The translations under genes were made by a program, and so were the position numbers. DNA of 64,000 nucleotides, taken from positions 452,806-516,805 of the IMG/VR virus record IMGVR_UViG_3300034072_000758; one strand, given 5' to 3'. This document shows, piece after piece, positions 24,609-61,587 of the stretch. The notes under the pieces were generated by a model. That model worked only from the letters and a program-made list of their open reading frames with translations. It ran no database searches and was not told where the DNA came from. Within the stretch, counting starts at the first letter, position 1, and each line of letters begins with the position of its first letter.

Positions 24609-24685
24609 TGGCAGGGGTGGAGAGATTCGAACTCCCATCGCGCAGTTTTGGAGACTGCCGCTCTAACCGTTGGAGCTACACCCCT
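24609..24685 (-). tRNA. tRNA-Trp(CCA)
   Basis: Canonical cloverleaf, GCAGT-CT-CCA-AA-ACTGC, encoded CCA. Confidence 0.95.
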
Positions 24686-24697
24686 ATAGGCGATCAA

Positions 24698-24976
24698 TCA
24701 CTTGACCGCAAAGGAAGAAATGAGCTTACAACTCGTTTTTACAAACCCTACATAACGAGGGTCCGAGAAACGGTCGAAGTCATTCAAATAATCGAAGTCC
24801 GCCTTGTCGATTTCATACACATGATATTCGACGGCTGGTGAATGCTGTTCTACAACCGTAAAACTACGGTCGCTTCTCAAGCCACGTTCTTTATCTGCGA
24901 TCTTCACAGCTTCAATCGGCCTTAAGTTATTCGTCAAGGCGACGATATGATTTTGATTCAAAACAGCGGTACGCAT
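24698..24976 (-). CDS. Hypothetical protein
   Basis: AAGGAG RBS; TTGACT promoter-like element near 25023. Confidence 0.7.
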   Translation of the reverse strand: MRTAVLNQNHIVALTNNLRPIEAVKIADKERGLRSDRSFTVVEQHSPAVEYHVYEIDKADFDYLNDFDRFSDPRYVGFVKTSCKLISSFAVK

Positions 24977-25036
24977 ACTATTACTCCTTACCCGACATTA
25001 ATAATTTATTTACATTATCAAAGTCAATTTTATTTT

Positions 25037-25127
25037 TGGAGGACGTGGTGGGACTCGAACCCACGGTGGTCTATGTTACGACAACAGGTTAAGAGCCTGT
25101 CCCTCTCGCCGCTGAGGTGACACGTCC
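25037..25127 (-). tRNA. tRNA-Lys(CUU), long-variable-arm variant
   Basis: ACAGG-CT-CTT-AA-CCTGT; extra arm GTC-GTAACATA-GAC; U73, encoded CCA. Confidence 0.85.
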
Positions 25128-25140
25128 GTATCAAAAATGT

Positions 25141-25220
25141 AGGGAGATCGGGTTCACCACAATCATGCTGGTACACAAGGTCGTCACATGATTAGTAACC
25201 CACTAGGGCATGGCTCCAGC
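25141..25220 (-). ncRNA. Small rod-like structured RNA inside the tRNA array
   Basis: GGAG/CTCC, GGGTT/AACCC and TAATCATG/CATGATTG nested helices. Confidence 0.4.
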
Positions 25221-25221
25221 T

Positions 25222-25297
25222 TGGTGAACACGGTGGGGGTCGAACCCACGACCTACTGATTAAAAGTCAGTTGCTCTACCTACTGAGCTACGTGTTC
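25222..25297 (-). tRNA. tRNA-Lys(UUU)
   Basis: Canonical, ACTGA-CT-TTT-AA-TCAGT, encoded CCA. Confidence 0.95.
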
Positions 25298-25298
25298 G

Positions 25299-25378
25299 TG
25301 CGCCCTGTCGGACTCGAACCGACACTCGTTAGAAGCAGATTTTAAGTCTGCCGGGTCTACCAATTTCCCCAAGGGCGC
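25299..25378 (-). tRNA. tRNA-Leu(UAA)
   Basis: GCAGA-CT-TAA-AA-TCTGC; no CCA, 1-nt spacer to next tRNA. Confidence 0.92.
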
Positions 25379-25428
25379 TTAGGTACTTTTCTTGTAAACA
25401 TCAAAGATGATTTTGGCAACATCTTTGT

Positions 25429-25504
25429 TGGCGAGGATAGAAGGATTCGAACCTCCGACACATGCGTTCGAAGCGCATTGCTCTGTCCACTGAGCTATAT
25501 CCCC
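25429..25504 (-). tRNA. tRNA-Arg(UCG)
   Basis: ATGCG-CT-TCG-AA-CGCAT, encoded CCA. Confidence 0.93.
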
Positions 25505-25505
25505 G

Positions 25506-25590
25506 TGCGCCGAGAGGGATTCGAACCCTCATACCATTACGGTGTCCGTTTTTGAAACGGGTGCGTCTACCAAAGTTCCGCCACCAGCGC
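25506..25590 (-). tRNA. tRNA-Leu(CAA)
   Basis: CCGT-TT-CAA-AA-ACGG, type II arm; no CCA, 1-nt spacer. Confidence 0.9.
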
Positions 25591-25641
25591 ATAGAAAACC
25601 TTTAATATAGATCGTTATCCACATCCATATTAAAGGTTATG

Positions 25642-25725
25642 AGGATGTAGAGGGACTCGAACCCCCGATGGTCTTTTGACAACGGATTAAAAGCCCGTCC
25701 CTCTCGCCGCTGAGGTGATACATCC
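25642..25725 (-). tRNA. tRNA-Lys(UUU), long-variable-arm variant
   Basis: ACGGG-CT-TTT-AA-TCCGT; extra arm GTC-AAAA-GAC; D region identical to 25037-25127. Confidence 0.85.
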
Positions 25726-25740
25726 ATAGTAGTATTTGTT

Positions 25741-25817
25741 TGGAGGACGTGGTGGGACTCGAACCCACAACATTCGGTTTAAGAGACCGACGCTCTAACC
25801 ATTGTAGCTACACGTCC
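25741..25817 (-). tRNA. tRNA-Lys(CUU)
   Basis: TCGGT-CT-CTT-AA-ACCGA, U73, encoded CCA. Confidence 0.93.
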
Positions 25818-25834
25818 GTATCAAACAAATACTG

Positions 25835-25907
25835 CGCGGATCAAGGGACTCGAACCCATAACCCTCTGTTTAGAAGACAGATGCTCGTCCAATTGAGCTT
25901 CATCCGC
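25835..25907 (-). tRNA. tRNA-Arg(UCU)
   Basis: TCTGT-CT-TCT-AA-ACAGA; G7.G66 and T-stem mismatches; no CCA. Confidence 0.85.
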
Positions 25908-25916
25908 ATAGTAGTG

Positions 25917-26002
25917 TGTGCCGAGGGGGACTCGAACCCCCACGCCCATTACAGGCCCCGGTTTCTGAAACCGGGAAGTCTACCAAATTTCATCATCAGC
26001 AC
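25917..26002 (-). tRNA. tRNA-Leu(CAG)
   Basis: CCGGT-TT-CAG-AA-ACCGG, type II arm; no CCA. Confidence 0.9.
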
Positions 26003-26027
26003 GTATGCTCTTTCGAGCAAAGTCTTG

Positions 26028-26107
26028 TACGGGTGAGAGGACTCGAACCTCCACGATTGCTCGCTAGAACCTAAACCTAGTGCGTCTACCAGTTTCGCCA
26101 CACCCGC
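26028..26107 (-). tRNA. tRNA-Leu(UAG)
   Basis: CTAGG-TT-TAG-GT-TCTAG; no CCA. Confidence 0.92.
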
Positions 26108-26108
26108 G

Positions 26109-26181
26109 CACTGCCAGTAGGACTCGAACCTACAACCTTCTGATTCGTAATCAGATGCTCATCCAGTTGAGCTATGGCAGC
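26109..26181 (-). tRNA. tRNA-Arg(ACG)
   Basis: TCTGA-TT-ACG-AA-TCAGA; no CCA, 1-nt spacer. Confidence 0.92.
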
Positions 26182-26189
26182 ATAAAGCA

Positions 26190-26295
26190 ACAAGACGGTG
26201 GGGTTCGAACCCACAACCTTTCGGCTCCGACTTTGACCGCAACGGCTTTTCGCAAACCATTACGTGCGTGTGTATACCCATTCCACCACGCCAAG
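26190..26295 (-). tRNA. Oversized Leu-like tRNA with a hairpin inserted in the anticodon arm
   Basis: Leu-type D arm, variable arm AGCC-GAAA-GGTT and intact T arm; 11-bp hairpin insert; two U.U pairs in acceptor. Confidence 0.6.
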
Positions 26296-26305
26296 TTACT
26301 TCAAG

Positions 26306-26390
26306 TGTCCATGAAAGGATTCGAACCTTCACGCCCATTACAGGCAACAGCCTCTCAAGCTGCCGTGGCTACCAATTACACCACACGGAC
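26306..26390 (-). tRNA. tRNA-Leu(GAG)
   Basis: GCAGC-TT-GAG-AG-GCTGT, type II arm; no CCA. Confidence 0.92.
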
Positions 26391-26399
26391 ATACGCAAG

Positions 26400-26516
26400 T
26401 GCGTTCGGGAGGATTCGAACCTCCAACCTCTATACTCGTTTGATCGTCATCCGACCAGTATAGCGGTATCCAACCCTCTAATGGGCTGGCGTGGCTACCA
26501 ATTTCACCACGAGCGC
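26400..26516 (-). tRNA. Oversized (117 nt) Leu-like tRNA with extended anticodon stem and ~45-nt variable arm
   Basis: GCGCTCG/CGAACGC-A acceptor, Leu-type D arm, CCAGCCC-ATTAGA-GGGTTGG, perfect T arm. Confidence 0.65.
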
Positions 26517-26526
26517 ATATTACGAG

Positions 26527-26601
26527 CGGGACTGGCAGGATTCGAACCTGCGACCTTCGGTTTCGTAGACCGGCGCTCTTATTCCGCTGAGCTACAGTCC
26601 C
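26527..26601 (-). tRNA. tRNA-Arg(ACG), second copy, first gene of the array
   Basis: CGGT-CT-ACG-AA-ACCG; no CCA. Confidence 0.92.
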
Positions 26602-57328: not shown

Positions 57329-57835
57329 ATGCGTTATAACAACATCGCAGCCGTCTTAGTAGCCGCGTTATTAGCTACTACTTCGGCAAAAGCCGCAACA
57401 CTCGATACAACACTTACATCGATTAGCACAAACGAAGCAATTCAACTCTTAGACAAAGGAACACAAAACGATATTACATGTTTAGCATTGAACATGTATC
57501 ACGAAGCAAGAGGAAGCACTTATAACGATATTTTAGCTGTTGGTCTTTCAACGCGAAATCGCGTCAATAAGCAAAAGAAGACCTACTGCCAAATTATCTG
57601 GGAACGCGGACAATATGTCTGGACTAAGCGGGCTATATCGGGGATTATGCCACGCGAACGGAAAATCTGGGACCGCATTCTAGTAATCTCTCGTGAAGTT
57701 GTCGAAGGCAAGCACGAGGACATCACATACGGGGCTACAAGCTTTTATTCCGCTGCGCTAAAGACGCCGCCAGCTTGGGCCAGAAATCGGAAGGCCATCC
57801 GTATTGGCGCGCACTATTACGTCAAAACAATTTGA
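57329..57835 (+). CDS. Cell wall hydrolase (SleB/Hydrolase_2) with signal peptide
   Basis: CLALNMYHEARG, NRV, C..I....QY.W, DITYGAT.F, P.W, IGAH.Y. Confidence 0.9.
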   Translation: MRYNNIAAVLVAALLATTSAKAATLDTTLTSISTNEAIQLLDKGTQNDITCLALNMYHEARGSTYNDILAVGLSTRNRVNKQKKTYCQIIWERGQYVWTKRAISGIMPRERKIWDRILVISREVVEGKHEDITYGATSFYSAALKTPPAWARNRKAIRIGAHYYVKTI

Positions 57836-57890
57836 CTTTGTAAAGGGCGATGAATTAATATCCCGATGAATAACTCAAGGGAATTATACA

Positions 57891-58436
57891 TTGTCCGAGT
57901 ACAACCGCGTAAAATCCATTTTGGATCGACACAATAAAATAGCTTGGGATGCGGACGAAACCCTAATCAATGGGCCACATTCCGAGCTATTTTGTCGTTA
58001 CGTCACCGAGCACCCCGAAACAGAACATCACATCGTTACGTTCCGTCATGGTTCTTGGGCGCAAAAAGTTCTTCTTGAGATCGAGGCTTACGGCTTGAAC
58101 AAAGATCAGTTCGCCGGTCTCCACCATCTTCCCCATGATGGGTTCTATTGGTGTAATGACGCCGTGGAAAACAAATCCGATCAATTAGAATATTATTCCG
58201 AGCAATGGGGTTGGACGGTCGAACAAATCAAAGACAACTCCAATTACTTCGTTATCTTCAAGGGACTGAAAGCTGCCGAGATAGGCGCTACCATCCTGAT
58301 CGATGATAAGCCTCATTGGGTTCTCAAAGGATGCGATGAAAACAAGATCGCATTCCTCGACTCCATTACTCTGGAACACCGTTGTAGCATTTCCCGGTTA
58401 ATCAGCCGCCTTAAGACGGACGCTGAACTCCTGTGA
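57891..58436 (+). CDS. HAD-superfamily phosphatase-like protein
   Basis: IAWDADETL (DxD), IVT.R, K, ILIDD. Confidence 0.7.
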   Translation: MSEYNRVKSILDRHNKIAWDADETLINGPHSELFCRYVTEHPETEHHIVTFRHGSWAQKVLLEIEAYGLNKDQFAGLHHLPHDGFYWCNDAVENKSDQLEYYSEQWGWTVEQIKDNSNYFVIFKGLKAAEIGATILIDDKPHWVLKGCDENKIAFLDSITLEHRCSISRLISRLKTDAELL

Positions 58437-58855
58437 AACGGGCTGTCATGAAAGGGACCGGGTTGAATGGTGACGATGAAGATGATTACATCGAATACCC
58501 CAATACACCTAATCTATACGAGTACGAAGGCCGATATTTCTGTGAGTTCGGCATTCTACAGATAGCCAACTGCCCCGATCTATGCGCTACGGGTTACGAA
58601 TGGGCCGATCCTCCGGTTTATCAACCCGAAGTCTATGAATGGTTTCAAGCCCAAACCAACTTTCGATATATCCCTACGCCGCTCGTAGGACCACCGAGCT
58701 TCGAATTTCCATCGGAAGAAAAACGTACTGAGTTCCTAACTAAATTTTGCCGCCCTTTCAATTATCAAGAGAAAAAGGCAAAAAGAAGACGATGGGCCAA
58801 GTCTGAGAAAAGAAACTGGCGAATCATTAGAGATTGGCAAAGTAAAAGTAAGTAA
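58433..58855 (+). CDS. Hypothetical protein
   Basis: GTGA overlap; followed by terminator. Confidence 0.65.
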   Translation: MKRAVMKGTGLNGDDEDDYIEYPNTPNLYEYEGRYFCEFGILQIANCPDLCATGYEWADPPVYQPEVYEWFQAQTNFRYIPTPLVGPPSFEFPSEEKRTEFLTKFCRPFNYQEKKAKRRRWAKSEKRNWRIIRDWQSKSK

Positions 58856-58885
58856 AGGGCGGTTTCAATAACCGCCTTTTATTTT
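58854..58885 (+). terminator. Intrinsic terminator
   Basis: GGGCGGTT-TCAAT-AACCGCCT + TTTATTTT. Confidence 0.8.
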
Positions 58886-58969
58886 GAATCTTAATAGAAT
58901 CAATTGTATATAAAAAAGTTGAATCTTTTGAATCATTTAAATTGACTATGACTCTCGATTCTAAATACA

Positions 58970-59575
58970 CTACACTTAACGTCCTTGGCAGGACGGTTAA
59001 AATTGACCAGATGTGTATAGCTCTCAACCATCGGAGCAAATCGTGTACGGGGAACATGACCCGTGATATGAGACCGGTCAAGTCGAACGGAGATCAACCC
59101 AAAGGGGCTTGGTTCCACCGCGCTCAATTGAGCGGAATAGGATCATAAAAGATGATCGGCGCTGAGTAATTGCGTAACGATCAATCATAGACCCGGCGAG
59201 ACGAAATAGCAACGCCGACTATGATGCTGGCCCAATAGGGCCTAACCGATTTCTGCGAGACTGAATATTAGTTCAACAACACTACAAAAAGACACTGGCG
59301 AAAGCTATCCTCACTGGTTTTGAATTGTTGCTATGCCTTTGATGGCGACTATTTGGTAACGTATTCATGGATTGATAAGATGATACTCAAGTTTAGGGAA
59401 TCCGCTTGAGTCGGTATCTAGCCAATACTAAGTCTTATAATTGTTATACCGAGTGGTACTCTCAATCCCCCTGTAAGGTAGACGTTTGGTTCGCGGACTA
59501 TATTTGCTCTAGGATTTTTAAAATACTGGACTTATATTCTTCTGGTCAATGTGTCTATCTTACAGGGGGGATAAA
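58970..59575 (+). ncRNA. Large (~600 nt) highly structured non-coding element
   Basis: TAAATA at 58962; more than 10 helices; 17-bp 3' stem; no credible ORF in ~830 bp. Confidence 0.65.
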
Positions 59576-59686
59576 GACTATTCATGGTAATAGATTATAA
59601 TGATCTTATCTAGGATCACTTGACAATCTGAGAAAATGTGAGATTATAAATATACACATTGGAATAAAATATGGAGATAGAAAATT

Positions 59687-60700
59687 ATGGTTGACTATAG
59701 CAATAATGAGCGTGTTAAGCGTTATCTCCCCAGAGTCGAACATAATGTTGGCTTAGATCACTATGATACTAAAGCCGCTCAAAAGGATGATCTCGATTCG
59801 CTTTCTCGTATCTATGATGATACGGTACAGAAGGATTTGACTAACGGCCTTCTGAAAGATATGCGCGATCTGGAAGCCAATGGTAAGGATCGTGATTCTT
59901 CGGAATATCGTGCGATCAGCGATCTCTATTGGGACGTTCCGTCCTATATCCATGAAATTCGTGATCGCCATCTTCCACGATTCGCCAAGTATGCTGATCT
60001 CGACTTCACTAAGAAGCTGATCGATCTACGTAACGCTGTTAAAGCCAAGGAAGTCGTCAAGAAGAAGTCCAAGGATGAATTGGCACAAGATGTCAAGAAA
60101 AACGCTGCGGCTAAAGTCTACCCGGTCGGCACCAAGGAATATGCTTTTAAAATCATTTCGGAAGCTACTGCGCCTCTGAAAGAGGCTGCTGTCGAACGTA
60201 CCCGTGTCGTTGCTAACGAAGTTATCGACCGGATCAAGGCCACGCTGGAAGAAAATGACTTCGATCCTTTCAAGATCGTTCCTAAGATCAAATATAAGAA
60301 CGTATGGGATGCGAACTATGATATGGCTAAGAAAGCCGATGAAGACCGCGCTCGCTATCTTCGTTGCTTGAAGATCGCCAATCAAGGCAAGTGGGACTAT
60401 AGCACTGGTGAATACGAAGGTCGTACCTATGAGTGGAATGAAGCCGCCCGCGAAACCTACGTGGCTGCGTGTGTCAAGGCTACCGAAAATCACTATGACT
60501 CGTATGTTCATAAGATGATCACGAAATGCCCGAACGCTAAAACGGCAACGTTCACCAGTGTGTTCGATGTGTGGTCGTTCTCCACCCTCAAGATCGAAAC
60601 CACCGATGGTGTGGTTGAAAAATGGAATACCAAAATCATGATCAACCAGTCCAAGTTCGGGTTGCTGTTCAATCAGTGGCGCACCACGCTTCAAAAATAA
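59687..60700 (+). CDS. Hypothetical protein
   Basis: 337 aa, GGAG RBS, TTGACA promoter; C-terminal INQSKFGLLFNQW. Confidence 0.85.
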   Translation: MVDYSNNERVKRYLPRVEHNVGLDHYDTKAAQKDDLDSLSRIYDDTVQKDLTNGLLKDMRDLEANGKDRDSSEYRAISDLYWDVPSYIHEIRDRHLPRFAKYADLDFTKKLIDLRNAVKAKEVVKKKSKDELAQDVKKNAAAKVYPVGTKEYAFKIISEATAPLKEAAVERTRVVANEVIDRIKATLEENDFDPFKIVPKIKYKNVWDANYDMAKKADEDRARYLRCLKIANQGKWDYSTGEYEGRTYEWNEAARETYVAACVKATENHYDSYVHKMITKCPNAKTATFTSVFDVWSFSTLKIETTDGVVEKWNTKIMINQSKFGLLFNQWRTTLQK

Positions 60701-60708
60701 ATATACTC

Positions 60709-61587
60709 ATGCGTTATCATGAGATATTGAACGAAAAATCGTTATTGGATGTTGGGGTGCGGGGTAATAAATTTTACCTCGCCGCCCGTTCCCAATGGCT
60801 GAACTTGGATGACTTATTTACCAATCATACCATCGGTAGCATTCGTGGTATAAGTTCTTCCAGAAAAATTTGGAAAGAGTTCGGCCCCAACGCCGGACGA
60901 GACATTTTCTTTGTTATGAACGCCACTTCTGTATTGAAGGCGAATAACGTAAAGCGCGTCCAGTATGATAATGTCAATGAGCTTCTGAAAGACAAATCAA
61001 AACTACTGGCTCGCATATACGACACCAACAATTTTGAAACCAGCGGCGGTTCCAATATTGTTTACGGAATTGTTCGTGACATTTTTCGTTTCCATGATTT
61101 TACCGGTGATGATCCAAATACCCTCGGTAATAATGCGCTCTCCATATTGTCGAGAATGCAACAGAACGGGACCATGAATCTATCCTCCTTGGATGCCTAT
61201 CGAGACCTGCTATTTCAAGCCGCGTCGAAAGGTAGCTGGCATACCCGCGAGTCCAAAAAATTCTTCGCACCACAAAACAAAGCCAAGAGCTTTCCGGTCA
61301 TCCAGAAGGCCATTATCAACCAAGCCAGTCGATATGATATGGAAGCTGAATGGATGGTATCTGGTGATTTCATAGTTCCTACGGACACACACATCATCGT
61401 GGCCTTCGGGAAAGAAGTGATGGACCCTATCAATGATCGAGATAGCAACTGGTCTATAGAGCGAAAGAAAGAAACACAAGCTTTTTTGGAAAGGATGAAA
61501 TCTTCACCCTACAAGTATTCTATCGTTGATGGAAACAAGACGGCTAACATGCTCGTAAAGCTTGGAATTAAGGGTTTACCGGAATAA
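60709..61587 (+). CDS. Putative head-packaged protein (MRYHEILNE leader)
   Basis: Start re-assigned: TAAATA-N5-ATG. Confidence 0.75.
   Translation: MRYHEILNEKSLLDVGVRGNKFYLAARSQWLNLDDLFTNHTIGSIRGISSSRKIWKEFGPNAGRDIFFVMNATSVLKANNVKRVQYDNVNELLKDKSKLLARIYDTNNFETSGGSNIVYGIVRDIFRFHDFTGDDPNTLGNNALSILSRMQQNGTMNLSSLDAYRDLLFQAASKGSWHTRESKKFFAPQNKAKSFPVIQKAIINQASRYDMEAEWMVSGDFIVPTDTHIIVAFGKEVMDPINDRDSNWSIERKKETQAFLERMKSSPYKYSIVDGNKTANMLVKLGIKGLPE

What the first reader, a model, noticed from the sequence alone, without database searches (positions are those of the whole stretch)
58962..59575. Large ornate ncRNA candidate behind a late promoter
This is an ~830-bp gene-free gap in an otherwise dense genome. 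After TAAATA (58962) come back-to-back helices: TTAAC-GTCCT/AGGAC-GTTAA, ACGGG/CCCGT, GCTC/GAGC, GATCAT/ATGATC, ATCATAG-CGGCG/CGCCG-CTATGAT, GGCCC/GGGCC, ACTCAAG/CTTGAGT, and a 17-bp stem (59467-59483 with 59553-59569). ATTGACCAGA (59002-59011) is perfectly complementary to TCTGGTCAAT (59541-59550) inside that stem's loop, a long-range pseudoknot, while TTGACC can alternatively pair with GGTCAA (59076-59081). Size and helix density resemble large phage RNAs such as GOLLD/ROOL, but I recognise no family motif. A structured replication origin is an alternative.
Basis: partly seen in the sequence, partly recalled or inferred. Interest (0 to 1): 0.72.

Follow-up and report, generated by a model that had tools for sequence, protein, structure and literature searches.

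The report
New large structured phage RNA family
The 830-base gap holds a gene for a roughly 620-nucleotide, intricately folded non-coding RNA that matches no known RNA family and occurs as four diverged copies spaced about a quarter-turn apart around a 517-kb jumbo phage genome.

Summary

The decisive evidence is that the same 517-kb phage genome holds three more full-length copies (45-64% identical). Their flanking genes are unrelated. Their helices sit at the same places with different sequences: 18 curated helices and 87 pair columns, 98% paired within a copy against 67% across copies, and 50 columns with compensatory double changes.

Each copy has its own sigma-70-type promoter (TTGACT-N18-TAyACT in three copies, TACCAT in the fourth), not a T4-type late promoter. 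Two copies lie antisense to both neighbours, so these are free-standing RNA genes. Two wastewater metatranscriptomes hold pieces of the element but none of its flanks.

I found no match in Rfam, GenBank phages, IMG/VR, JGI metagenomes, GTDB genomes, or the whole genomes of the nearest isolates, Atu_ph07 and Phosso.

Its "alternative" TTGACC/GGTCAA pairing is the conserved one, and a different pseudoknot (GGAUK with mAUCC) covaries.

The function is unknown. My best guess is a stable trans-acting structured RNA. A replication-origin pre-primer RNA is a serious rival, because the four copies are evenly spaced (p about 0.01) and two of them sit at strong GC-skew switches.

The parts
58858..58885 (+). 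Intrinsic terminator of the upstream 140-aa gene (GGCGGTT/AACCGCC followed by a T-run). It separates that gene's transcript from the element.
   Evidence: Read directly from the sequence. The scan reports the same hairpin on the minus strand only.
58942..58971 (+). Sigma-70-type promoter of the RNA: -35 TTGACT (58942-47), an 18-nt spacer, and -10 TACACT (58966-71). The inferred start is near 58978.
   Evidence: The promoter scan scores it 9/12. The same TTGACT-N18-TAyACT arrangement (TACCAT in copy D) heads all four copies. AAATTGAC[AT]-N17/18-TATAAT-like sites recur before genes across the genome.
58976..59000 (+). P0, a 5' hairpin. A hairpin is present here in every copy, but its sequence and length vary.
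59004..59255 (+). 5' domain with a pseudoknotted core. It contains P1' UGACC/GGUCA (59004-08/59076-80) and P1 CAGAUGU/AUUUCUG (59008-14/59249-55). It also contains H1 (59020-37), H2x+H2 with the conserved loop GAACAUGA (59040-67), and P2 CGG/CCG (59088-90/59246-48). P2 encloses five hairpins, ha to he (59098-59242).
   Evidence: Alignments. Helix table. P1'. Coordinates. Models R1 and R2 score all four copies at 85-108 bits.
59256..59363 (+). Middle linker region. It includes a 31-nt block (59286-59316) that is identical in copy B. Its structure is poorly defined.
59369..59429 (+). A conserved pseudoknot plus a hairpin. GGAUU (59369-73) pairs with AAUCC (59399-403), which lies in the loop of hairpin Pv, ACUCAAG/CUUGAGU (59385-91/59405-11). 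Hairpin Pu follows at 59413-29.
   Evidence: Pv covaries in all four copies. Pw changes from U-A to G-C in copies C and D and to U.G in B.
59443..59591 (+). 3' arm. It consists of Px GUUAU/GUAAU (59443-47/59587-91), Py GAGUGGU/ACUAUUC (59451-57/59577-83), and the long hairpin Pz (59466-84/59552-70) with a C5/G6 base. The internal loop GGGGGGAUAAAGAC is conserved.
   Evidence: A natural variant in run X3 adds a C after 59466, making C6 opposite G6.
59592..59686 (+). AT-rich spacer that carries the downstream gene's own promoter (TTGACA-N16-GATTAT, 59620-47). There is no canonical terminator for the RNA, and one RNA-library contig runs to 59648.

Best explanation
**What it is.** Window ~58978 to at least ~59592 (+) is a free-standing gene for a ~620-nt non-coding RNA. 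It is one of four diverged paralogs (585-690 nt) in a 517-kb jumbo phage related to Agrobacterium phage Atu_ph07.

**What is shown.**
- Each copy is headed by its own host-type (sigma-70-like) promoter.
- The RNA folds into a conserved architecture. It has a variable 5' hairpin, then a 5' domain with a pseudoknotted core (P1'/P1/P2) that carries H1, H2 and five peripheral hairpins. A linker follows, then a small H-type pseudoknot (Pw/Pv), and finally a long 3' arm (Px/Py/Pz).
- Helices vary by compensatory changes, while junctions and three apical loops stay constant.
- The family has no detectable relative in public RNA, phage, metagenome or genome collections.

**What is inferred.**
- The product acts as a folded, stable RNA in trans. 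It would be made early by host RNA polymerase.
- The invariant pseudoknotted core would be a binding or catalytic centre, and the variable hairpins would act as scaffolding.
- It would therefore work like the other large ornate phage-associated RNAs (ROOL, GOLLD), as a self-organising RNA or RNP particle rather than as a regulator of its neighbouring genes.
- Which partner or substrate it acts on is unknown.
For: **Paralogs.** There are four copies in the genome: G000 89.5k (+), 221.5k (-), 358.8k (-) and 511.7k (+). Their flanking proteins are unrelated.

**Structure.**
- The curated table has 18 helices and 87 pair columns. Pairing is 98.3% canonical within a copy against 66.6% when strands are swapped between copies. 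Fifty columns show double compensatory changes, and 36 cells are G.U, which marks the sense strand.
- In a structure-blind check, 62-64% of double changes at MFE pairs stay canonical, against about 30-40% in slid controls.
- MFE z-scores are -4.5 to -6.4.
- Most of the helices appear in each copy's own MFE fold.

**Non-coding.** Mismatches fall evenly across codon phases (69/71/66), and no conserved ORF exists.

**Free-standing.** The promoter is conserved. Copies C and D are antisense to both neighbours.

**RNA libraries.** Contigs from RNA runs X5 and X6 cover only 59050-59648 of a 4-kb stretch, apart from one 41-nt piece with 5 mismatches at 58844-58884. DNA run X2 covers the flanks too. 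Copy D appears in another RNA run.

**No known family.**
Against: - There are only four sequences, all from one genome, so a formal covariation test of the R-scape kind is impossible. The helix table was also curated by hand.
- The RNA-library evidence is thin. It rests on four single-read-sized contigs, the runs were selected because they contain the element, and DNA carry-over cannot be excluded.
- Neither RNA end is mapped, and there is no canonical terminator.
- A trans-acting RNA gives no reason for the near-even spacing of the copies (p 0.007-0.02).
- It also gives no reason for copies A and D sitting at strong GC-skew switches.
- No partner protein gene is conserved next to the copies.
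Confidence: 0.6

Rival explanations
1. Origin-associated pre-primer RNAs. Each copy would mark a replication origin. The promoter-driven, structured transcript would form a persistent R-loop just downstream and prime leading-strand synthesis. This is how ColE1 RNA II and the T4 oriF/oriG transcripts work (established knowledge). Four origins a quarter-turn apart would serve a half-megabase genome.
For: - The copies are nearly evenly spaced on the circular map, with gaps of 0.255, 0.266, 0.296 and 0.183 of the genome. P(spread of gaps this small) is 0.007, and P(minimum gap this large) is 0.019.
- Copy A lies at one of the strongest negative-to-positive GC-skew switches in the genome (top 0.16% of random positions), and copy D is in the top 3%.
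- Copy D sits beside the clamp-loader gene.
- Every copy is followed by an AT-rich spacer, and no terminator is seen.
- The size is similar to that of ColE1 RNA II.
Against: - Copies B and C show no skew switch.
- Skew in this genome tracks gene orientation, so the switches may only mark module boundaries.
- The spacing test was made after the fact.
- T4-type origin transcripts are not known to need an ornate, pseudoknotted, covarying fold.
- RNA-library contigs of the element without its flanks suggest an accumulating stable RNA.
Confidence: 0.25
2. A cis-acting leader or riboswitch-like element that controls the gene downstream.
For: Copies A and B point the same way as the next gene.
Against: - Copies C and D are antisense to both neighbours.
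- The downstream genes are unrelated.
- Copy A's downstream gene has its own promoter between it and the element.
- 600-700 nt is far beyond the size of known leaders.
Confidence: 0.03
3. Decayed or ORF-less mobile RNA elements, such as group I or II introns or another retroelement RNA, that spread to four sites.
For: The element is multi-copy, large, structured and pseudoknotted. Related T4-like phages carry group I introns (established knowledge).
Against: - No intron model matches, even at E up to 10.
- No copy interrupts a gene. Each follows a terminated gene or an intergenic region and has its own promoter.
- The copies are 45-64% identical, so any spread is ancient, yet all four keep their helices.
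Confidence: 0.05
4. A DNA-level element with no RNA role, such as hairpins in single-stranded DNA or protein-binding arrays for packaging or recombination. A chance cluster of hairpins or small protein genes is a further variant.
For: The antisense strand also folds better than shuffles, with z-scores of -1.7 to -4.7. The JGI gene caller placed a 66-aa gene inside the gap.
Against: - Thirty-six G.U pairs would become A.C mismatches on the other strand.
- The sense MFE is 9-28 kcal/mol lower than the antisense in all copies.
- A co-oriented promoter is conserved.
- There is no codon-phase bias and no conserved ORF.
- Chance cannot explain four copies with compensatory changes.
Confidence: 0.04

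Closest known systems
ROOL RNA (about 581 nt) and GOLLD RNA (about 800 nt), large ornate bacterial and phage RNAs
   Same: The size class is the same. All have many multistem junctions and pseudoknots, and all have few invariant nucleotides set in covarying helices. They are carried by phages or prophages, are free-standing, and have unknown function (PMC5737381). The known ones form RNA-only multimeric cages (PMC12286853).
   Different: There is no sequence or structure match to either covariance model. The element is not next to tRNA genes; the nearest cluster is about 32 kb away at 24609-26601. It occurs as four diverged paralogs per genome, evenly spaced. It was found only in one jumbo-phage lineage. 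Multimerisation is untested.
ColE1 RNA II and the T4 oriF/oriG origin transcripts
   Same: In both cases a promoter-driven, non-coding transcript of several hundred nucleotides has a fold that matters. T4-type phages use several origins around the genome. Two copies of this element lie at GC-skew switches.
   Different: No origin has been mapped here and there is no sequence similarity. This fold is far more elaborate and more strongly conserved than anything described for T4 origin transcripts. Two of the four copies show no skew signal.
Group I and group II self-splicing introns of phages
   Same: They are large, pseudoknotted, multi-copy RNAs found in T4-like phages.
   Different: This element does not sit inside a gene and has its own promoter. 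No intron model matches it, and no splice-site features were found.
Two-copy unannotated non-coding element of Agrobacterium phage Atu_ph07 (383.17-383.66 kb and 489.98 kb across the record start)
   Same: It occurs in the nearest cultured relative. It is also a multi-copy, several-hundred-nt, gene-free element with visible compensatory changes and no Rfam match.
   Different: It has no detectable sequence homology to this family. It has two copies that are not evenly spaced, and I did not analyse its structure in depth.

Membership tests
GOLLD RNA | Match to the Rfam covariance model | tested here: not met
   No hit at the gathering threshold on the window. No hit at E<=10 on 58700-59800 or at E<=5 on the other three copies.
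ROOL RNA | Match to the Rfam covariance model | tested here: not met
   The same searches apply.
ROOL/GOLLD kind | More than 500 nt, with several multistem junctions and pseudoknots, in phage or prophage DNA | tested here: met
   The RNAs are 585-690 nt, with at least 18 helices and two pseudoknots (P1'/P1 and Pw/Pv). They lie in a 517-kb phage record.
ROOL/GOLLD kind | Frequent adjacency to tRNA genes | tested here: not met
   The tRNA cluster of the window is at 24609-26601, about 32 kb away. In the gap-wide aragorn scan, none of the four copies' gaps contained a tRNA gene.
ROOL/GOLLD kind | Homo-oligomeric RNA-only assembly | not testable with these tools
   This needs native gels, SEC-MALS or cryo-EM.
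Group I intron | Interrupts a gene whose exons join into one reading frame, and matches the intron model | tested here: not met
   The upstream ORF ends with a stop codon and a terminator. The element has its own promoter, and the flanking proteins are unrelated. No Rfam hit.
Group II intron | Match to the Rfam group II intron models | tested here: not met
   No Rfam hit.
T4-type late promoter | TATAAATA box conserved upstream and used genome-wide | tested here: not met
   Copy A has TCTAAATA (7 of 8), B has 6 of 8, and C and D have none. TATAAATA occurs 34 times in the genome, which equals my composition-based estimate of the chance number (count).
Sigma-70-type promoter | TTGACA-like and TATAAT-like hexamers 16-18 nt apart, conserved in position | tested here: met
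   All four copies carry TTGACT-N18-TAyACT (TACCAT in copy D). Similar sites lie upstream of many genes. Promoter activity itself was not tested.
Origin pre-primer RNA (ColE1 RNA II or T4 oriF/G type) | Located at a replication origin | tested here: inconclusive
   Skew switches occur at copies A (top 0.16%) and D (top 3%) but not at B or C. The spacing is even, p 0.007-0.02.
Cis-regulatory leader or riboswitch | Lies upstream of, and co-oriented with, a recurrent class of regulated genes | tested here: not met
   Copies C and D are antisense to both neighbours, and the neighbours differ in all four copies.

The most novel reading that the evidence does not exclude
The four RNAs are structure-dependent origin RNAs. 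In this reading, a half-megabase phage genome is replicated from four quarter-spaced origins. Each origin is fired by an ornate, pseudoknotted pre-primer transcript of a previously unseen family. Equally unexcluded is that the four diverged paralogs co-assemble into a hetero-oligomeric RNA particle.
Probability: 0.22. Interest if true: 0.9.

Novelty: categorically new. Interest (0 to 1): 0.8.

Why it matters
Bacterial and phage RNAs longer than 500 nt with complex conserved folds are very rare. The known ones are rRNAs, group II introns, GOLLD, ROOL, OLE and HEARO (PMC5737381). Those that have been studied turned out to have unexpected biochemistry or architecture (PMC12286853).

This looks like a new such class, with features none of the others show. 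It has four old, diverged paralogs in one viral genome, each has its own promoter, and they sit almost exactly a quarter of the genome apart, two of them at GC-skew switches.

If it is a stable particle, it adds a new large RNA fold for structural study and a new player in jumbo-phage infection. If it marks origins, it would show how a 0.5-Mb phage genome organises replication and would tie an elaborate RNA fold to initiation.

The family is also a reminder that the 'gene-free gaps' of jumbo phages hold undescribed RNA genes. The nearest cultured relative, Atu_ph07, has its own unannotated two-copy element.

Tried and rejected
- **Rfam.** Searched at gathering and at permissive E-values on all four copies. 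Only noise came back, such as miRNA and sRNA models far below threshold.
- **GenBank phages.** blastn of the gap found nothing. tblastn of the flanking proteins found only distant or no hits.
- **Motif-pattern scans.**
  - IMG/VR gave 0 hits for three patterns.
  - JGI metagenomes gave 4 hits, all chance: none aligned to the element beyond short word matches, and the one read in full was coding.
  - GTDB genomes gave 9 hits, all chance by model score.
- **Relatives found through the terminase.** These are Atu_ph07, Phosso and IMG/VR contigs. I searched them with DNA, models R1 and R2 and nhmmer --max on the whole genomes. Nothing was found. The single weak R1 hit in Atu_ph07 lies inside a CDS.
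- **The search for related loci** with the downstream protein found nothing. **The look-up of encoding contigs** returned only the source sample.
- **Structure-aware alignment.** It was not available because MAFFT Q-INS-i is not installed. RNAalifold on plain MAFFT alignments loses the helices in which copy D is misaligned, so I curated the helices by hand and checked them with controls.
- **Helices I dropped.**
  - An RNAalifold helix UCAUGGAU/AUUCAUGG was dropped in favour of Px/Py, which also hold in copy D.
  - A GAC/GUC mini-hairpin was dropped in favour of P1'.
- **16S rRNA mimicry.** Short resemblances to 16S rRNA motifs, recalled from memory, were not pursued. They are not colinear, they are absent from copy D, and no rRNA model scored.
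- **Literature.** Searches found no description of such an RNA.

Full report
**Where the window lies.** The window is the last 64 kb of a 516,805-bp IMG/VR virus record. Its 'terminal repeat' is only 127 bp, so the map is effectively circular. The large terminase is 52% identical to those of Agrobacterium phage Atu_ph07 (490 kb) and Sinorhizobium phage Phosso (469 kb). A Ros/MucR regulator gene also points to an alphaproteobacterial host.

**The observation.**
- The 140-aa ORF ends at 58855 and is followed by a clean intrinsic terminator (58858-58885). The next ORF starts at 59687, which leaves 831 non-coding bases.
- The sense strand folds at -196 to -202 kcal/mol, with z about -5 against dinucleotide shuffles. 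The antisense strand gives z about -3.4.
- Rfam finds only the 14 tRNAs elsewhere in the window, and nothing in the gap even at E<=10.

**The key finding: three more copies in the same genome.**
- A DNA search of the phage's own genome found further copies. A small covariance model of the 5' core (R1, then R2) found a fourth and no more.
- The copies are:
  - A at 511.7 kb (+), which is this window.
  - B at 221.5 kb (-).
  - C at 89.5 kb (+).
  - D at 358.8 kb (-).
- A and B are 64% identical. All other pairs are 45-48% identical.
- The flanking proteins are unrelated. They include an endolysin-like protein and unknowns at A, an EcoRV-like nuclease and an ART-domain protein at B, Ros/MucR at C, and a gp44-like clamp loader at D.
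- C and D lie antisense to both neighbours. The element is therefore a self-contained module, not a leader.
- There is no coding signal. A-B mismatches fall 69/71/66 over the three codon phases, and only short translated matches appear, in all frames of both strands.

**Promoter.**
- All four copies begin with AAATTGACT (AATTTGACT in D). Eighteen bases further on there is a -10 box: TACACT in A and C, TATACT in B, TACCAT in D. The scan tool scores the A site 9/12.
- AAATTGAC[AT]-N17/18-TATAAT-like sites stand in front of many genes of this phage. This is the genome's host-polymerase promoter type.
- The 'late promoter' is therefore not supported. I infer the start near 58978.

**Structure.**
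- Each copy's own MFE fold and the alignments agree on a common architecture.
- From 5' to 3' the parts are:
  - A variable 5' hairpin, P0.
  - P1' UGAYC/GRUCA, which encloses H1 (loop ending in CAUC) and H2x/H2 (loop GAACAUGA).
  - P1 CAGAUGU/AykUCUG and P2 CGG/CCG, which close a multiloop of five hairpins (ha to he). P1 crosses P1', so the core is a pseudoknot if both form.
  - A linker.
  - Hairpin Pv, whose loop mAUCC pairs with an upstream GGAUK (Pw, an H-type pseudoknot).
  - Hairpin Pu.
  - A long 3' arm, Px-Py-Pz, with a C5/G6 base and the conserved internal loop GGGGGAUAAAGAC.
- The hand-curated table covers 18 helices and 87 pair columns. Pairing is canonical in 98.3% of cells within a copy, but in only 66.6% when the 5' strand of one copy is matched with the 3' strand of another.
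- Fifty columns show a change on both sides that keeps the pair. Thirty-six cells are G.U, which marks the sense strand.
- Because I picked the helices myself, I added a structure-blind check. I took the MFE pairs of A alone, read them in B through a plain MAFFT alignment, and looked at pairs where both partners changed. Of these, 21 of 34 (62%) stay canonical, against 18-48% when the 3' partner is slid by 1-3 positions. The reverse direction, B read in A, gives 64%.
- With four sequences from one genome, no R-scape-type significance can be given.

- ATTGACCAGA/TCTGGTCAAT is a 10-bp match in copy A (shuffle p 0.006). B keeps 6 bp at chance level, and C and D have nothing.
- The 'alternative' TTGACC/GGTCAA is P1'. 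It is kept in all four copies, with C-G (A, D), U-A (B) and U.G (C) at one position.
- GATCAT/ATGATC is replaced in the family by the covarying GAUCG/CGAUC helix.

**Expression.**
- An index of public runs lists the element in the source sample, in a soil metagenome, in runs of two named organisms, and in two wastewater metatranscriptomes.
- I laid these runs on 57400-61400. The RNA runs contribute four 151-nt contigs at 99-100% identity, all within 59050-59648. They contribute none on the flanking genes, apart from one 41-nt piece with 5 mismatches at 58844-58884. The DNA run X2 covers both flanks and element.
- This is suggestive, not proof. The runs were chosen by the element's own words, contigs show presence rather than absence, and DNA may be present in RNA libraries.
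- One contig reaches 59648, so the 3' end is not at 59592. No canonical terminator follows any copy.
- A variant in run X3 inserts a C after 59466, turning C5 into C6 opposite the G6 run. Its A>G change at 59549 (also seen in run X6) would keep the copy-A-specific long-range pairing as U.G.
- Copy D is listed in a marine-sediment metatranscriptome.

**Distribution.** I found no relative in any of the following:
- Rfam.
- GenBank phages.
- Three IMG/VR motif scans.
- One JGI metagenome scan, which gave only chance hits.
- One GTDB genome scan, also only chance hits.
- The complete genomes of Atu_ph07 and Phosso, searched with BLAST, the covariance models and nhmmer --max.

**Genome-scale pattern.**
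- On the circular map, the four copies are separated by 0.255, 0.266, 0.296 and 0.183 of the genome. A spread of gaps this small has p = 0.007, and a minimum gap this large has p = 0.019. This was a post hoc test.
G-C in the 20 kb to the right minus the 20 kb to the left of copy A is +812, exceeded at 0.16% of random positions. Copy D gives +674 (3%). B and C are ordinary.
- Skew in this genome follows gene orientation, so the switches may simply be module boundaries.

**Interpretation.**
- Shown: this is a promoter-headed, non-coding, structurally constrained element in four old paralogs, and it belongs to no described family.
- Inferred: it is a stable, trans-acting RNA whose invariant pseudoknotted core is the functional centre. 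This places it in the same loose category as ROOL and GOLLD (PMC5737381, PMC12286853) without being a member of either. I give this reading 0.6.
- The main rival, at 0.25, is a structured pre-primer RNA at four replication origins, in the manner of ColE1 RNA II or T4 oriF/oriG. It explains the spacing and the two skew switches, but not the ornate fold or the two copies without skew.
- The leader, intron and DNA-only readings are each contradicted by a direct test.

**Novelty.** It is a new RNA family. The general category of large ornate phage RNAs has precedents, but the four-paralog, quarter-spaced arrangement has none that I could find.

Noticed in passing
window 24609-26601 (-): A cluster of 14 tRNA genes on the minus strand: Leu x5, Lys x4, Arg x4 and Trp x1. 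Several have long variable arms, and Lys and Arg isoacceptors are duplicated.
   Followed up: no
Atu_ph07 NC_042013.1 383170-383660, and 489980-490380 continuing into 1-100 (L109, L110): The nearest cultured relative carries its own two-copy element of about 350-490 nt, 80% identical between copies. It lies in stretches with no annotated feature. Compensatory changes are visible (CUUAAG..CUUAAG against UUUAGG..CCUAAA), and it starts with a CCCCCGC/GCGGGG hairpin. It has no Rfam match and no detectable homology to the family studied here.
   Followed up: partly
Atu_ph07 intergenic gaps at 38.7, 73.7, 85.2, 123.6, 169.1, 179.3, 291.5 and 329.7 kb: A repeat of about 50-60 nt recurs, sometimes twice per gap, in at least eight intergenic gaps of Atu_ph07 at 77-90% identity. 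I did not check its nature (promoter, terminator or REP-like).
   Followed up: no
G000 221456-222181 (-) and 219888-220826 (-), flanking copy B (L002): The phage encodes an EcoRV-family restriction endonuclease (Pfam E 2e-50). On the other side of the RNA gene lies a protein with an ART-PolyVal ADP-ribosyltransferase domain.
   Followed up: no
G000 88531-88992 (-), near copy C (L003): A phage-borne Ros/MucR-family transcriptional regulator (Pfam E 1e-45). This family is typical of Rhizobiales and so hints at the host.
   Followed up: no
window 59620-59652 (+): The downstream 337-aa gene has its own good sigma-70-type promoter (TTGACA-N16-TG-GATTAT). It overlaps a perfect TATAAATA at 59645-59652. 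This is the only T4-late-like box in the gap, and it belongs to the gene rather than to the RNA.
   Followed up: partly
G000 ends (1-127 and 516679-516805): The 'direct terminal repeat' of the record is only 127 bp. That looks like an assembly overlap of a circular or circularly permuted map rather than a physical terminal repeat.
   Followed up: partly
window 58948-59148 (+): The JGI annotation calls a 66-aa gene with a TTG start inside the RNA's 5' domain. It is not conserved in the paralogs and is very likely a false call.
   Followed up: yes
Atu_ph07 NC_042013.1 79548-81739: The large terminase is annotated as two adjacent CDSs 11 nt apart (372 nt and 1809 nt). This suggests a frameshift, a sequencing error or a small insertion.
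   Followed up: no
window 59056-59060 with 59365-59369: The invariant H2 loop (CAUGA) is complementary to UCAUG just before the Pw strand. Copy C changes it to UUAUG, which is wobble-compatible, and copy D keeps only 3 bp. This is a candidate contact between the two domains, and it is unproven.
   Followed up: partly
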